NCBI GenBank assembly: GCA_904063045.1
Contig: CAJFCJ010000016.1
Span: forward strand, 186,001-250,000
Reading direction: 5' to 3'
DNA length: 64,000 nucleotides
Source of the DNA: Dimorphilus gyrociliatus
Taxonomy: Eukaryota; Animalia; Annelida
The position numbers and the translations under genes are program-made. How positions within the stretch are numbered: position 1 is the stretch's first letter; each line of letters begins with the position of its first letter. Below, piece after piece: positions 37,828 through 45,044 of the stretch. The notes under the pieces were generated by a model, which had not been told where the DNA came from, did no database searches, and worked only from the letters and a program-made list of their open reading frames with translations.

Positions 37828-39308
37828 TCAAAGATTTTTATGTAAGTATTCCAATAGATCACCCATCATTCTAAGGCCTTCATCGGTTTTTAATGGTTCC
37901 GCAATATAGTTTAGAATAGCGTGGAAACCATGTTCGTAATTTTTCCAAATTGTATCAACTCCGGCATTGCGTAATCTTGCTGCGTAAATTAAGCCGTCAT
38001 CCCTTATACAGTCGTACTGGGCAGTAGGAATGTAGGCAGGTGGTAAACCAGTTAAATTCTTTTCCATAAGTGGCATAAAATAAGGATCAAGATAGAATTT
38101 TTTCATAGCATCAACAATTTTTGGAATAGGATCCTTGAACACTGACGGTTTATAATTAGGCCTTAAATATTGCGGTAATAGTTCATAGTCTATTAAGTGA
38201 TAATACAGATCATGTATTTCCTTCGTCACATGCCTATTTTTAGCAACGTCCGGGACAAAATCTATATTTTGGCCACTATATAGTATGATTGCTGCCGCTA
38301 GACCTTCTCGGTCGCCATAGGCTACTCCAGAAAACTTCCGATAAGAATATGTATCTAAATCAAGCGCTTGTAAAACAGGATAAATTAAAACCTGTAGCTT
38401 TGGCTTATATTTATTTCCCTCGTCTCTAAGCTTGAGAGTCGCAGCCGCAGCTAAATTTCCACCAGCCGAATCTCCAACTATGGCCATTCTTTCTTTGTCA
38501 ACACCGAATTCCTCGGCTCTTTCATAAAAGTATTTATATGCTTCCAGGCAATCTTCCAGAGGTATTGGATATGCGAATTCTGGTGCACGACGATATTCTA
38601 CTGATACAACCACTAAATTTTGAATATTTTTGGCGAAGGTTCTCGCGACTACGTCATGAGAGTCAACACTTCCGAGCATCCAAGCACCACCGTGAATAAA
38701 AAACAAACCGGGTCCCAAAACTGTCGTTTCTTTATTAACTTGAGTATACACACGAACGATTACATCTCCGAACTTTGTGTCATTGACCTGTTATAGATAT
38801 TTAAATATAGGCACTCAAAAAAAACTCGAACTATGTCAAAAATGAAGTCACACGTGTCTAAGAGTACAAAAATATGATATCGTTCGTTGTATAAGTAAAA
38901 AATTTGTCCCAATTAAAGATCACGTGGATTAGTGTAAATTCCCTAACTGAATTACTTACTCGTAAACCAGTATAGTCTATTCCTTGTAAAGTTACAAGAG
39001 CATCTGTTATAGTTCTTGCTGTTAAATGTGGTGGACATATTCCTAAATTGTACAAAAGCCGAGCCTGTTTAGAAGAATAAAATTTGCAAATATAACTGTA
39101 ATTTAATGCTATTGCATGTAAATTTATTTACCAAACTTTCAATGTTCTCTAATAGCCTAATAACAAATCTGGCGTGATGAGGGCTTGTAATATCAGATGG
39201 TAACGGTTTGTAGAATAACACAGCAGTTATTATAGCGATTAAAGAGGCAACTATAAGCCATTTTCTCACAAACTTCCTTGTTGATTTTCGATTATTTTCT
39301 CTTACCAT
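37828..39308 (-). CDS. Membrane-anchored HSL-family esterase, AADAC/NCEH1-like
   Basis: N-terminal signal anchor, HGGAW oxyanion motif, GDSAGG Ser, and catalytic Asp/His regions YDCIRDDG and HGFH. Confidence 0.92.
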
Positions 39309-40752
39309 AGTTGATATCTTTGTCAGACTACGAACACAATCAGAATAAGAACTCAGATATACAAATACAGAGGCTACAGGTCAAAAATTCGTGAACTTTG
39401 TTTAGCCATGATGTAATCATTCAAGTACAAGTCTGATTTATTAAAAACAAAAATTGATAATCTTATGCACGTTTCATAATTATATATATATATGTTCCCC
39501 TAAGATATCAGTAATACTGTATAGCATTATGATGACCTCCAGATAAATAAGTAAAGCATGTATATATTATAATATATATATATATATATATATTCAAGCA
39601 TATATTTAATATTTTACTAACCAATCGTTTGTGCCACTGACTTTTTTACTTTATCGTTTATTAGACTATACTTTTAAAGCTATCCTAGAATAGAATATAC
39701 AATATCAACAATTTATTATAGATATTTCTCAATAGTCAGCCTTTTATAACTATTAGAAAAAAGTTAATCAGTTTTAAAAATCTTCTATTGAAAAACTTCG
39801 TTTTTATTGTTTGTCAATGAATTTTATCTTTTTAAAAATCCGTTTATATAATAATGGTAGTGATAGATTCTATAAAGTGGCCATAAAATTGTCTAACAAA
39901 ATTAAACGATCATAGAAATAATGCATCGTTTCCAATAGAATTAAAGTATATTATTATCTACATTGCAAAAATTATAAGATAAGGTGTGGCTCCACCAAAA
40001 TAATTTGTTACTTACCTTCAATCATTTCACACTTTAGTTTTTTATTAATGTAGATTTAATTCATGAGTATTTCTTTATGCTATATCTGACATTCTCTCTG
40101 TTTAGATTCTCAAACTCAGACTGTTTTGATAGAAATGGCTCGGAACATGATACCCGCCCAAAATCGTACGATCCGGAAATCCTGATCATTTAAAAGCATT
40201 AAGCCTATAGGGGGCAGGATCCACATTACTTCGTCATGTTCAATAAGTTAGGAAAGAAAATGTTATATTCGTGAATAAAATCTTACGTCATATTTAATTA
40301 TACAGTTCTAAATATACGTATTATGTAATTATTGATCATCGGCTCTAGAGTTAAAAACTTATCTCTCTATTTGAAATAGTACAGCATATTTCTGGGAATT
40401 TTTTAAAAAATATAGAACACGTGATTCTTATTAACAGTGACATTCATATTTATCATTATAGGTAAACAAGTAATAAACAAAAATATTTTTTTAAGCGATA
40501 TCTTTTTGAATAAATCACCTTTTCTAATTATAAAATATATGAATATTTAAAAAATTTTTATCTTTTAAAAGAGTCACTTTAGTAATAAAGTTAACTTTTA
40601 ATTGGGATATTTATGATTACTAGTAGTTTGTATGTAAATTAAAGCGAACGTTATCGATGAAAAGTCGTTCCATTTTCACATACGATGTCCTGCTGAGAAA
40701 ACAACCTAATCGCTTGACTTCTGTAAAACAAGTTAATTGGCATTAAACTGCA

Positions 40753-42807
40753 ATGATTAGAAAAGGCGTCTACTCTCTGTTACAATTTCTTTTACTTTAT
40801 ATTCATTTTACTCAGTCAATTGAAAGATTAAAGGTCTTTATTAACACAACATCACCTTTAAATGAGCTAGACGATACCTACCTCAGCATAGGACTAGATA
40901 CTGGTGTTGCTTCTCGTCATTGGAACAAAGGAAAATTTGATTTTCGGTAAAACTGAATACGTATATAATGATTTGAACCTATAGTTAAGAATTGTTTTTG
41001 AAATATAGTTCAAAAAAACTACTTGACCTCTGTCAAGCATTATCTCCTGCCACTCTAAGATTTGGCGGGAATGCGGCAGATACGCTTTTATTCGAACCTA
41101 ATTCTTTTATGAAAAGCGTGAAAAATTTCAATTTTTCAGGTAAAATTATCTGAACTTTTTGTTAAATATGATTTATTTACTACGGAATTGAATTTATTAA
41201 TAAAATAATAGGTGAAGACTTAACTAAACTGCATACATTTACCACTAAAGTTGGCTGGAAATTGATGTTTGATTTGAATGTTTTAATTCGAAATCATTCA
41301 AAATGGGATGATACAAATACAAAGAAAATGTTAGATTTTATGATAAAAAATCACCAATTCCAACATTTTGACTTTCAATTAGGAAATGGTTGATAAAAAA
41401 AACCTTTACATAATTGAAATATTATCTTGATTAATCTGTTTTTCTTTCATTTTTTCTTATCAGAACCAAATGCCTTTAAACATACGTTTAACATAAGTTT
41501 ATCTCCAGAAGAGTTAGCGAATGATTACTTAAATTTAATTTCTGTACTTCGATCGCCAATTTATAGTAAATATTTTGATAAAAGTTTAATTGTTGGACCG
41601 GAAATTACTCAACCAAAGAACATTCGTGTTTTATCCTATTTGAAAAGGTAATGTTTACTATTTCACTTTCAAATTTTACAGCTCTACAAATTACTTTAGA
41701 TTTCTTGTGTCATTCAAGATGAATTATCCATTAAATGCAGTGACATTCCATCAGTATGTTACTATTTATACTAGAAATTCTATATAAGTATAATACAGTT
41801 GTTTTCTGAAGTTATTATCTTAATGGAAGAGAAGCAAAAATGGAAGATTTTCTAAATGAAACAGTTATGAACAAATTAGAGGAAGAGATAAATAATGTAA
41901 AAGTTCTATTAAGAGATTTAAATATTCATAAACCAATATGGATAACGGAAACGTCTTCTGCTTACGGTGGAGGAGCTCCTGGATTATCGGATTCATTTAT
42001 TGCCGGATTTTTGTAAGATTTCAATGAAAGATTAATTTTTCTATCATAAGAGATAATTCTATTTATAAATATTCTATAAATAGATGGATGGAAAAATTAG
42101 GTATGGCGGCAAAGCTGGGAGTAAAAAAACTTTTTCGACAAGCAATATACGGTGGTAACTATGCCTTATTGGATAAGAAACTCAATCCACTTCCCGTACG
42201 TTTTATAACATCGTTTTGTCAGTATAGTTTCCAAAAAATGACTTAATATATAACTCTTCCTTTCTAGGATTATTGGTTAACCTTGCTATTTAAGCGTCTG
42301 GTTGGGAGAAAAGTGTTTAATGTTAAATTAAACAATGAAGATGGCGTTAGAGCTTATTGCCACTGTTCCAACAAGTATTTATCTTTAACTCTATAAATTT
42401 TTTAAGATGTAAAACATAAAAAATTCTTTTCTAATAAATCTTGTAGATTTGCTCAAAGAAATTCCTTAACGCTCTTTGTGCAAAATATGAAGAATTGTTC
42501 TGTTCTATTAAGTGCGGAGTATAGTTATGGAACATTCCAGCCTGAAATATCAGTATATTCCTTAACGGGGCACGGTCCTGATGGACTGTTATCCAAGTTT
42601 GTTTTAAAGTAAACATTTTGGCAATTGATGTATGAAATATGCTAAATTATTTTTAACAGAAACGTCAATTTAAATGGAGTTAAGTTGGCTTTACTACAAA
42701 ATCGATTACCTAAACTGCAACCAACTATTTCTAGATCTCCTATTACACTACCTCCATATTCATTTACATTTTTACTACTTCAAATGGATACTAGACACAT
42801 ATGTTAA
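40753..42807 (+). CDS. HPSE: Heparanase-family (GH79) glycosidase, tandem copy 1
   Basis: Signal peptide, LSPATLRFGG, acid/base QLGNE|P, nucleophile WITETSSAYGGGAPGLSD, NPLP|DYW, AYCHCS, LPPYS. Stop is at 42805-42807. Confidence 0.92.
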
Positions 42808-42957
42808 TTATTGATCATTGACCAAGGGGCGTTAAAACATCTTATCTGTTAACTTTCTTAACAAGCAGGCTAAAGCATTAATTTTCAAGTTGTTTAGGCC
42901 TATAAATCTCATATGGCTTTTTTTATATAATACAGACTGTAAATAGAGATTGGTACA

Positions 42958-44802
42958 ATGCTACTAAAATTATTTTTTACCTGTTTTGTCGCTACTACAA
43001 CAGGAAATGTTTTAAACGTGTTAGTGGATACTAATAGCGTTGTTAATAGAATAGACGATACATTTCTAAGCGTTAATATAGACGGTGGAGCAGCAACAAC
43101 AGATTGGTATTCGGGAGTTATACAATTTAGGTAACAAGGCAATGAATAATCAGTTTAGAACCTCTTTTCACAATAATAAAAACTATTGTTATTTCTCAAA
43201 TAGCTCGAAGAAATTTCAACAATTATGCAAGAATTTGGCTCCTGCATCTTTTCGATTCGGCGGAACGACAGCTGATTATCTAAATTATGGCGATTATCCG
43301 GAAACGCCGTACTCTTCAAAGAATTTTACGATTCTTGATTATGATACATTGTATGATTTTACTAAACTGGTTGGGTGGAAATTGATATTTGGCGTCAACG
43401 CGTTAACAAGAACTTCAGACGGAAGGTGGGATTCTTTAAATACTAAGACATTATTAGATTACATAAAATCTAGTAATAAAAACGATTTGGATTTTGAATT
43501 AGGAAACGGTTTGATAATTTAAATTTGTCTTTAAAAAACGAATAATTAGATATTTGAAGATGTAAATGAATATTTTCAGAGCCGGACGTTTTTCCTCCTC
43601 ATCTAAACATTACCGGAGCCAGATTAGCGAAAGATTTAGCCGTGTTTTACAGACTTATACATTCGTCAAGATATGGTAATTATTTTAAAGGAAGTAAATT
43701 ATATTCACCCGACGTTACTGGACCCTGGATCAGTCCTAATAAATACTTAAAAGAGTATGACAATATGAACATACTGTGGGAAAACATTCTAACATTTATG
43801 CAATTTTTTGTTGTAGGTACCTTTCGAATATACCAGTTGGAACGAAACTGGATGCGATAACAATACATCAGTAAGTTAGTATTCTTATTAAATAAATAAA
43901 TTATAATAAATATTGGTATAGCTATTATTTGGACGGACGAATAGCGAAATTGGACGATTTCTTGAAGATAGACACGTACGATAGGTTAACGAGAGGATTA
44001 CTTGACACATTACGGGTATTGAAGGAAACAGGCTATGAAGATACTCCCTTGTGGCTGGGTGAAACTTCAAGTGCTTTTAGTGGTGGAGCACCTGGTTTAT
44101 CTGATGTTTATGTAGCCTCATTTTTCTGGCTAGACAAACTTGGCGTTGCTGCTAAATTGGGTTTAAAGAAGGTGGCGAGACAGCAAATGCTAGGTGGCCA
44201 TTACAGTTTGTTCGATCAGCAAATGAATCCGAATATTGTAAGTCAATTTTCCTCCATCCCCATTTAGAATAATTGTAAATTTGCTTAATTTCTTATATTG
44301 TTGTAACTTATAATTAATTCTACAGGATTATTGGACTTCTGTTTTATATAAAAGATTAGTTGGTAGTGCTGTTTTTAACACTTCAACTGTACCATCGAAA
44401 CCAGGAATTAGGGCTTATAGTCATTGCTCGTCGAAAAAGTAAATTTGCTATTCTCTTAATTATAGCATTCAGTTAAAGTAAAGATATTTCTTTGCTTATT
44501 TTTTCTTCAGATATTGGAACTTTCCTCAGGGCTCTTTAACATTCTACGCGGTTAATATAAATAATGAACCGAGCCATATACATTTTGGAACAGAATCGAA
44601 AGAAATGCTAGTTTTCCAACTGACCTCTGCTAGTGATCTTAAATCGAAGTACGCAAAATTAAATGGAAAAATATTGAAATATGATGGAAAGATGCCCGAT
44701 TTAAAACCAGAGTTAATATATGACTCGACTATTATTCTACCTCCGTATTCGTTGACTTTTTCAGTATTACCTGGTGCAAATATTGATGCTTGCAAGACTT
44801 AA
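42958..44802 (+). CDS. HPSE: Heparanase-family (GH79) glycosidase, tandem copy 2
   Basis: Signal peptide MLLKLFFTCFVATTTG, LAPASFRFGGT, ELGNE|P, WLGETSSAFSGGAPGLSD, WLDKLG, DYW, LPPYS. Confidence 0.92.
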
Positions 44803-45044
44803 TTTCGTGTTTTGAAAACGGAGAGAGAGGATATGCATATTAGTAGTTTTAGATTCATTCTTTTGATTGATATTTGAAATTGGTACTCAATATTCTTTGA
44901 AGCTGTAATGATTTTAATCCGAGAGAAATAATAAAATTTGTATAAGCAAATGCTATTAATCTGTTGAAACCTTAAAAATAAACATAATTAGAGTGAATTA
45001 GTTGGCCTTATTCGATTTCTAAATTAAATTTAAAAAGGGAAACA

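What the first reader, a model, noticed from the sequence alone, without database searches (positions are those of the whole stretch)
41040..43510. Both tandem heparanases lack the proenzyme linker, suggesting constitutively active single-chain GH79 enzymes
Vertebrate proheparanase has a linker of roughly 50 aa between the RFGG..FDP motif and the N-S-T-Y-S...LYTF segment, which must be excised for activity. Here the gap is only 8-9 aa: copy 1 FEP-NSFMKSVK-NFNFS|GEDLTKLHTF and copy 2 YGD-YPETPYSSK-NFTILDYDTLYDF. The copy 1 intron there is only 72 nt and copy 2 has none, so no exon is hidden. Both catalytic Glu motifs are intact. Short loops of this kind occur in leech hyaluronidase (a GH79 enzyme) and bacterial GH79s, and this loop influences endo versus exo activity. 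The two diverged paralogues may have different glycosaminoglycan specificities.
Basis: partly seen in the sequence, partly recalled or inferred. Interest (0 to 1): 0.7.

Follow-up and report, generated by a model that had tools for sequence, protein, structure and literature searches.

The report
Two linker-less heparanase-family genes in tandem
This small marine worm has two neighbouring, expressed genes for heparanase-like sugar-cutting enzymes that lack the built-in blocking segment of the vertebrate enzyme, but many other invertebrates lack it too, so the find is real and fairly ordinary.

Summary
Two tandem GH79 genes lie on the + strand: copy 1 (40753-42807, 10 exons, 485 aa) and copy 2 (42958-44802, 7 exons, 475 aa). 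They are 40% identical. A spliced contig from a public run confirms all 15 exon junctions. Introns are 51-88 nt, so no linker exon is hidden.

- **Missing linker:** between the RFGG motif and the N-x-S/T site, both proteins have 8-9 residues after F-E-P / Y-G-D. Human heparanase has 55 there, including its 48-aa linker.
- **Catalytic site:** both catalytic Glu and the glucuronic-acid pocket residues are kept.
- **Copy number:** these are the only GH79 genes found in the genome, probably the annelid Dimorphilus gyrociliatus.

Single-chain enzymes that need no linker excision are therefore the most likely reading, but this is inferred, not tested. It is not unusual. Measured from the RxGG motif to the conserved LN motif, the loop is 44-45 aa here. 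It is 41-45 in a chiton and abalones and 49-78 in other named invertebrates, some reaching 83-90. In 111 of 113 mostly vertebrate heparanases it is 86-95.

Leech hyaluronidase has an intermediate loop, about 22 aa longer than here. Engineered linker-less human heparanase (GS3) is already known to be active. Substrate and endo/exo mode remain open. This is a new member of a known kind.

The parts
40753..42807 (+). Copy 1 gene, 485 aa. Exons: 40753-40946, 41009-41139, 41212-41388, 41464-41647, 41700-41753, 41812-42012, 42084-42195, 42268-42374, 42447-42596, 42660-42807 (stop included).
   Evidence: Model built. All 9 junctions are confirmed by the spliced contig of run X2. blastp to heparanase-family proteins reaches 5e-109.
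42958..44802 (+). Copy 2 gene, 475 aa. Exons: 42958-43130, 43204-43508, 43580-43754, 43817-43870, 43922-44237, 44326-44438, 44511-44802 (stop included).
   Evidence: Model built. All 6 junctions are confirmed by X2, and one (43870>43922) also by metatranscriptome run X1. Exon 5 alone passes the Pfam PF03662 gathering score (23.9 against 23.1 bits). It matches human heparanase at 1e-24.
41100..41123 (+). Copy 1 short loop NSFMKSVK, at the place of the vertebrate linker. It lies between F-E-P and the N-F-N-F-S glycosylation-type motif.
   Evidence: Direct reading. Alignment to primate and mouse heparanase.
41140..41211 (+). 72-nt intron of copy 1, just after the loop. It has GT..AG ends and an in-frame TGA, and is removed in RNA.
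43295..43321 (+). Copy 2 short loop YPETPYSSK, inside exon 2, between Y-G-D and the N-F-T sequon.
41058..41069 (+). RFGG motif of copy 1. This is the strand preceding the loop and belongs to the part that matches the human 8-kDa subunit.
43253..43264 (+). RFGG motif of copy 2.
41385..41468 (+). Acid/base motif N-E-P of copy 1 (E168). The Glu codon is split by the 75-nt intron 41389-41463.
41948..41950 (+). Nucleophile Glu E293 of copy 1, in the motif T-E-T-S-S-A-Y-G-G-G-A-P.
43505..43584 (+). Acid/base motif N-E-P of copy 2 (E160). The Glu codon is split by the 71-nt intron 43509-43579.
44061..44063 (+). Nucleophile Glu E283 of copy 2, in the motif G-E-T-S-S-A-F-S-G-G-A-P.

Best explanation
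Shown: the region holds two tandem, transcribed genes of the animal heparanase branch of glycoside hydrolase family 79. Each has a hydrophobic N-terminal signal-like segment and both catalytic glutamates. Each also keeps the residues that hold glucuronic acid in subsite -1 and the conserved Cys pair. The part that matches the human 8-kDa subunit is joined to the part that matches the 50-kDa subunit by a loop about as long as the two mature human chain ends placed together.

Inferred: with no segment lying over the cleft, the proteins fold as single chains with an open active site. They should work as retaining beta-glucuronidases without the cathepsin-L-type excision that vertebrate proheparanase needs. 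The short loop makes endo action on a glucuronic-acid-containing glycosaminoglycan more likely than exo action.

Also inferred: copy 1 keeps more of the basic and heparan-sulfate-type contacts (K158, K161, Q270). Copy 2 has lost most of them (R272 to W, K231/K232 to P/H). The two may therefore prefer different, possibly less sulfated, substrates. As the only GH79 genes in this genome, they probably carry out glycosaminoglycan turnover in this worm.
For: - Splicing and expression.
- Two-stretch alignment that skips the linker of 5la4_A.
- Strong similarity to the human heparanase 50-kDa subunit (1e-24) and to leech hyaluronoglucuronidase (3.5e-18).
- Catalytic and -1 subsite residues D62, N224, E225, Y298, E343, G350 and Y391 (human numbering) are kept in both copies. 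PMC9500389 lists all of these except Y298 as conserved GH79 features; taking Y298 as a -1 subsite residue rests on my recollection of the human structure papers.
- The loop after P106 is 18-19 residues. Human K107-E109 plus K158-V172 is 18.
- Human 8-kDa and 50-kDa parts joined by GSGSGS give a catalytically active single chain (Nardella 2004, as cited in PMC4847616).
- Recombinant 489-aa leech GH79 hyaluronidase was functionally active when overexpressed; no activation step is mentioned in the passages read.
- A short loop gives an open cleft and endo action in bacterial GH79, and a long loop gives a pocket and exo action.
- No other GH79 gene was found in the genome.
- A proxy protein with the same loop length (abalone P0026) folds with pLDDT 93.6. 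It superposes on proheparanase (TM 0.89) and on leech hyaluronidase (TM 0.86).
Against: - No enzyme assay or protein-level data exist.
- The window's own spliced proteins could not be folded or scanned whole; only exon pieces and a proxy were used.
- Copy 2 has Y348 to F and G349 to S beside the nucleophile.
- Several sulfate-binding residues of human heparanase are absent, so 'heparanase' in the strict sense (EC 3.2.1.166) is not shown for either copy.
- Lack of a linker does not exclude other controls, such as pH, an N-terminal propeptide or inhibitors.
- The run that supplied the spliced contig has no recorded library type.
Confidence: 0.72

Rival explanations
1. The enzymes are exo-acting beta-glucuronidases that trim terminal glucuronic acid, not endo-acting glycosaminoglycan-cleaving enzymes.
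For: GH79 contains both modes. The sulfate-binding residues of the -2 and +1 subsites are poorly kept, especially in copy 2.
Against: In solved GH79 enzymes the exo pocket is made by a long loop at this position: 40 aa in the Acidobacterium enzyme against 24 in the endo-acting Burkholderia enzyme. The loops here are at the short end of all animal relatives. The nearest characterised relatives, human heparanase and leech hyaluronidase, are both endo-acting.
Confidence: 0.12
2. One or both copies are hyaluronoglucuronidase-type or chondroitin-degrading enzymes rather than heparan sulfate enzymes. Copy 2 is the likelier candidate.
For: Copy 2 lacks the basic residues R272, R273, K231 and K232, and has substitutions next to the nucleophile (FSGG), as do the leech-type sequences (YNSG). 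NCBI names some equally short-looped abalone paralogues 'hyaluronoglucuronidase-like'.
Against: Exon-level similarity is higher to human heparanase than to leech hyaluronidase (1e-24 against 3.5e-18; 9e-15 against 4e-3). The leech-like sequence does not group with either copy in the trees. From my own knowledge, not tested here, protostomes generally lack hyaluronan.
Confidence: 0.25
3. The proteins still need an activating step of another kind, such as removal of an N-terminal propeptide or a cut within the short loop, so they are not constitutively active.
For: Nothing here measures activity. Lysosomal hydrolases are often trimmed.
Against: The short loops hold no dibasic or linker-like segment. 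A 6-residue artificial joint suffices for activity of the human enzyme.
Confidence: 0.08
4. One copy is a non-catalytic heparanase-2-like binding protein.
For: Heparanase 2 is an unprocessed, inactive relative. Copy 2 carries changes near the nucleophile.
Against: Both Glu and the whole -1 subsite are kept in both copies.
Confidence: 0.03

Closest known systems
Vertebrate heparanase HPSE (GH79, EC 3.2.1.166; structures 5E8M mature, 5LA4 proenzyme)
   Same: Same family and the best sequence match. Same catalytic Glu pair, the same glucuronic-acid pocket residues, the WHHYY and GETSSA motifs, and the C-terminal Cys pair. There is an N-glycosylation-type motif at the start of the part that matches the 50-kDa subunit.
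   Different: No 48-aa linker, so there is no 8-kDa / 50-kDa two-chain maturation. Most basic sulfate-binding residues are not kept. The proteins are 475-485 aa against 543 aa.
GS3 single-chain human heparanase (engineered; Nardella et al. 2004, as cited in PMC4847616)
   Same: The 8-kDa and 50-kDa parts are joined by a few residues. The window's loops are about as long as the mature human chain ends joined together.
   Different: GS3 is artificial and its activity was tested. The genes here are natural and untested.
Leech hyaluronidase LHyal (GH79, EC 3.2.1.36; structure 7EYO)
   Same: It is an annelid single-chain GH79 of 489 aa, functionally active as a recombinant protein and shorter than proheparanase at this loop.
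   Different: Its loop is about 67 aa from RxGG to LN, against 44-45 here, and it has a further insertion of about 9 aa before NEP. Sequence similarity is lower than to human heparanase. It shows no phylogenetic grouping with the window's copies.
Unstudied 'heparanase-like' proteins of other invertebrates (for example Haliotis XP_046344609, Liolophura XP_064600893, Owenia CAH1783335, Photinus XP_031341445)
   Same: Same length class (459-494 aa), the same short loop (41-53 aa) and often in tandem copies.
   Different: Only 35-40% identical to the window's proteins. None was found characterised in the papers searched.
Bacterial GH79: Burkholderia pseudomallei heparanase (5BWI) and Acidobacterium capsulatum beta-glucuronidase (3VNY)
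   Same: Single-chain GH79 fold. The loop at this position decides between an open cleft and a pocket.
   Different: Only about 18-20% identity (proxy model). Exon-level E-values are near 0.5.

Membership tests
Glycoside hydrolase family 79 (Pfam PF03662 Glyco_hydro_79n) | Significant match to the family profile | tested here: met
   Scanned exon by exon only. Copy 2 exon 5 scores 23.9 bits (cut-off 23.1), copy 2 exon 2 scores 22.9, and copy 1 exon 6 scores 17.9. The locally spliced models hit PF03662-bearing proteins at 1e-101 to 5e-109. The joined proteins were not sent to Pfam.
Glycoside hydrolase family 79 | Two catalytic glutamates: acid/base in N-E-P and nucleophile in E-T-S | tested here: met
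   Copy 1 E168 and E293; copy 2 E160 and E283.
Glycoside hydrolase family 79 | Conserved glucuronic-acid (-1 subsite) residues: N224, E225, E343, G350, Y391, plus positions 62, 97 and 349 | tested here: met
   All are kept. Position 97 is N in copy 1, as in the bacterial enzymes, and T in copy 2. Position 349 is G in copy 1 and S in copy 2 (residue list from PMC9500389).
Glycoside hydrolase family 79 | (beta/alpha)8 barrel plus beta-sandwich fold | tested here: inconclusive
   The window's proteins are spliced, so they have no single reference and were not folded. A proxy with the same loop length (abalone P0026, 35% identical to copy 2) gave pLDDT 93.6. Its TM-score is 0.89 to 5LA4 and 0.86 to 7EYO.
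Vertebrate-type proheparanase (zymogen HPSE) | Linker of about 48 aa between the 8-kDa and 50-kDa parts, excised for activity | tested here: not met
   There are 8-9 residues in place of 55. No exon is hidden, and RNA junctions confirm this.
Heparanase in the strict sense (EC 3.2.1.166, heparan sulfate endo-beta-glucuronidase) | Basic heparin-binding clusters HBD-1 (K158-D171) and HBD-2 (Q270-K280) | tested here: inconclusive
   Copy 1 keeps K158, K161 and Q270, with a Lys next to P271. Copy 2 has T, S, G and W at positions 158, 161, 270 and 272. Gap placement in HBD-2 is uncertain.
Heparanase in the strict sense (EC 3.2.1.166) | Cleavage of heparan sulfate | not testable with these tools
   This needs an enzyme assay.
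Leech-type hyaluronoglucuronidase (EC 3.2.1.36) | Closer kinship to LHyal than to heparanases | tested here: not met
   E-values favour human heparanase. The leech-like representative P0092 does not group with either copy.

The most novel reading that the evidence does not exclude
The inhibitory linker, and with it zymogen control of heparanase, may be a chordate addition to a hypervariable loop that was short in the bilaterian ancestor. Most invertebrate heparanases, including the only two in this compact annelid genome, would then be natural equivalents of the engineered single-chain enzyme and active as made. Long loops in scallop, priapulid and horsehair worm would be independent, unrelated insertions.
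Probability: 0.4. Interest if true: 0.45.

Novelty: new member of a known kind. Interest (0 to 1): 0.27.

Why it matters
Heparanase is a drug target, and its activation by linker excision is treated as a hallmark of the enzyme. These genes add a clean, transcript-supported example showing that the hallmark is missing outside chordates. A small genome carrying only two such genes could serve as a simple system to ask what an unregulated heparanase-family enzyme does in an animal.

The survey made here shows the loop varying from 41 to 99 residues across animals, which I did not find described in the papers searched. Linker-less GH79 enzymes are already known, however: leech hyaluronidase, the bacterial enzymes and the engineered GS3. 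Many invertebrate database entries share the same architecture. A specialist would therefore be only mildly surprised.

Tried and rejected
- **Hidden exon:** rejected. Introns are 51-88 nt and a spliced contig covers every junction.
- **A canonical linker-bearing heparanase or heparanase 2 elsewhere in the genome:** none found. All 8 matches of a 59-sequence profile fall inside these two genes.
- **Close orthology to leech hyaluronidase:** not supported.
- **Are the two copies a lineage-specific duplication?** Unresolved. They are sisters in a 69-row quick tree (SH-aLRT 90). They separate without strong support in a 31-row careful tree. An AU test does not reject sisterhood (p = 0.32).
- **Tunicate isoforms as natural linker-skipping forms:** rejected. 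The 45-aa difference between the Styela isoforms is at the N-terminus.
- **The window's own proteins in the protein collections:** not found. The best hit was a 105-aa fragment at 78% identity.
- **Literature:** no paper in the library holds heparanase, leech, GH79 and loop together. The paper on the 7EYO structure was not found.
- **Earlier scan notes on heparanase, GH79 or hyaluronidase:** none.
- the joined spliced proteins have no single reference. They were not sent to Pfam, to the protein searches or to structure prediction. Only exon pieces went by reference, and the joined models were used solely in local scripts for alignment and trees.
Full report
**Where and what.** The window is AT-rich (31% G+C) and carries short introns. 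Earlier notes of this scan name the genome as the miniature annelid Dimorphilus gyrociliatus. I did not verify the name. The assembly size of 77.9 Mb and introns of 51-88 nt fit the published 73.8-Mb genome with a median intron of 66 bp (bioRxiv 10.1101/2020.05.07.078311).

**Gene models.** From the three-frame translation I built two models on the + strand.
- Copy 1 spans 40753-42807, with 10 exons and 485 aa.
- Copy 2 spans 42958-44802, with 7 exons and 475 aa.
- All introns have GT..AG ends.

Laying public runs on 40700-44850 gave a 2787-nt contig of run X2 in which all 15 introns are removed exactly at the modelled junctions. The library type of X2 is not on record, but contigs without introns are cDNA-like. 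A coral metatranscriptome (X1) holds a 326-nt contig spliced at 43870>43922, with two differences. So both genes are transcribed and no extra exon exists. No intron exceeds 88 nt, while a 48-aa linker would need 144 nt.

**The missing linker.**
- Copy 2 exon 2 holds the whole region in one exon. It aligns to human proheparanase 5la4_A in two stretches, query 2-41 to chain 44-83 and query 34-101 to chain 124-190, so the linker is skipped.
- After F-E-P (copy 1) and Y-G-D (copy 2) come 8 and 9 residues, then the N-x-S/T motif. Human heparanase has 55 residues there.
- After the Pro that matches human P106, the window's proteins have 18-19 residues before the L-H/Y-T/D-F helix. Human K107-E109 plus K158-V172 make 18 (human numbering from a primate representative with a checked offset).
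- The natural loop is therefore about what remains when the human linker is deleted.

**Catalytic competence.**
- Acid/base residue: E168 in copy 1 and E160 in copy 2.
- Nucleophile: E293 in copy 1 and E283 in copy 2.
- D62, N224, Y298, G350, R382, Q383 and Y391 (human numbering) are also kept, as is the C437-C542 cysteine pair. Reading those two cysteines as a disulfide is from my recollection of the human structure.
- PMC9500389 lists N224, E225, E343, G350 and Y391 as absolutely conserved for glucuronic acid binding in GH79, with positions 62, 97 and 349 as conservatively variable.
- Both N-termini are hydrophobic, like signal peptides.
- Residues that bind sulfates in the human enzyme are only partly kept in copy 1 (K158, K161, Q270). 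They are mostly lost in copy 2 (R272 to W, K231/K232 to P/H, Y348 to F, G349 to S).
- The two copies are 40% identical.

**Family and copy number.** Exon pieces hit Pfam PF03662, human heparanase (1e-24) and leech hyaluronoglucuronidase 7eyo (3.5e-18). A profile of 59 relatives searched against the whole genome found matches only inside these two genes.

**How common is the short loop?** I searched 1.84 billion representative proteins with the nucleophile exon, so the ranking does not depend on the loop. In full-length hits I measured the residues between the RxGG motif and the conserved LN motif.

| Source | Loop (aa) |
|---|---|
| This window, copy 2 / copy 1 | 44 / 45 |
| Liolophura (chiton) | 41-44 (alignment / motif count) and 49 |
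| Haliotis (two species) | 45 |
| Antedon (crinoid) | 49 |
| Owenia (annelid, two paralogues) | 51 and 78 |
| Photinus (firefly) | 53 |
| Centruroides (scorpion) | 54 |
| Bacillus rossius (stick insect) | 60 |
| Patella (limpet) | 62 |
| Capitella (annelid) | 65 |
| Cydia (moth) | 71 |
| Pecten (scallop) | 83 |
| Priapulus and Gordionus | 90 |
| Branchiostoma (amphioxus) | 80 |
| Styela (tunicate) | 85 |
| Lamprey | 99 |
| 111 of 113 other (mostly vertebrate) heparanases | 86-95 (mode 92) |

Leech hyaluronidase, read from the printed alignment, has about 67. So the loop is hypervariable across animals. The window's proteins sit at the short end together with molluscs, and the uniform long form is chordate-typical.

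**Mechanism.** In proheparanase the linker lies over the cleft and blocks heparan sulfate. Joining the two human parts by GSGSGS gives an active single chain. Recombinant leech hyaluronidase was functionally active when overexpressed, and no activation step is mentioned in the passages read. In bacterial GH79 a short loop gives an open cleft and endo action, while a long loop gives a pocket and exo action. By inference the two worm proteins are single-chain, unblocked, probably endo-acting beta-glucuronidases. Their substrate is not known.

**Structure.** The spliced proteins have no single reference, so I did not fold them, scan them whole or send them joined to any search tool. As a proxy, the abalone protein P0026 (same loop length, 35% identical to copy 2) folds with pLDDT 93.6. 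It shows a coil of about 11 residues between the two strands flanking the loop. It matches 5LA4 (TM 0.89) and 7EYO (TM 0.86).

**Phylogeny.** Deep branches are long and poorly resolved. The copies are sisters in one tree and apart in another, and the AU test is neutral (p = 0.32). The vertebrate clade, with amphioxus and Styela beside it, is supported.

**Literature.** A 2025 review states that invertebrate 'heparanases' are highly divergent and leaves them undescribed (PMC12406646). I found no paper on loop length in invertebrate heparanases. From memory, and not found in the library, Nardella et al. 2004 also replaced the human linker with a loop from a leech hyaluronidase.

**Verdict.** The functional reading is reasonable but untested. 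The feature is a common state of invertebrate relatives, so this is a new member of a known kind.

Noticed in passing
window 42660-43127: One spliced contig of run X2 (2787 nt) runs without a break from the last exon of copy 1, across the 150-nt intergenic gap, into the first exon of copy 2 and onward. This could be read-through, overlapping UTRs or an assembly merge. The genome paper reports no operons or trans-splicing in this species.
   Followed up: partly
window 43853-44229: A coral metatranscriptome (run X1) holds a 326-nt correctly spliced fragment of copy 2 with only 2 differences. This worm or a very close relative was probably living in that coral sample.
   Followed up: no
window 40753-44802: All six introns of copy 2 sit at positions shared with copy 1. 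Copy 1 has three more: in the loop region, at F-L|W and at S-K|N. So either copy 2 lost introns or copy 1 gained them after the duplication.
   Followed up: no
related proteins P0046 and P0080 (Owenia fusiformis, same chromosome-scale contig): Two sister paralogues of another annelid differ by 27 residues in this loop (51 against 78 aa). Loop length therefore changes quickly after duplication.
   Followed up: partly
related protein P0002 (Batillaria attramentaria, 1021 aa): This gastropod gene model holds two heparanase-family units in one protein. It is probably two tandem genes fused by annotation. Abalone also has many tandem copies, so tandem duplication of this family recurs in spiralians.
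   Followed up: no
window 37828-38751 (- strand) and 45178 onward (+ strand): The neighbours are an alpha/beta-hydrolase fold-3 esterase exon (Pfam PF07859, 1.4e-53) upstream and a multi-exon protein kinase gene downstream. The kinase N-terminus reads like CDK8/19 by eye.
   Followed up: partly
related proteins P0047 (Pecten), P0011 (Priapulus), P0132 (Gordionus): A few non-chordate relatives carry long loops (83-90 aa) whose sequences are unlike the vertebrate linker; one is Gly-rich low complexity. Whether these block the cleft or are excised is unknown.
   Followed up: no
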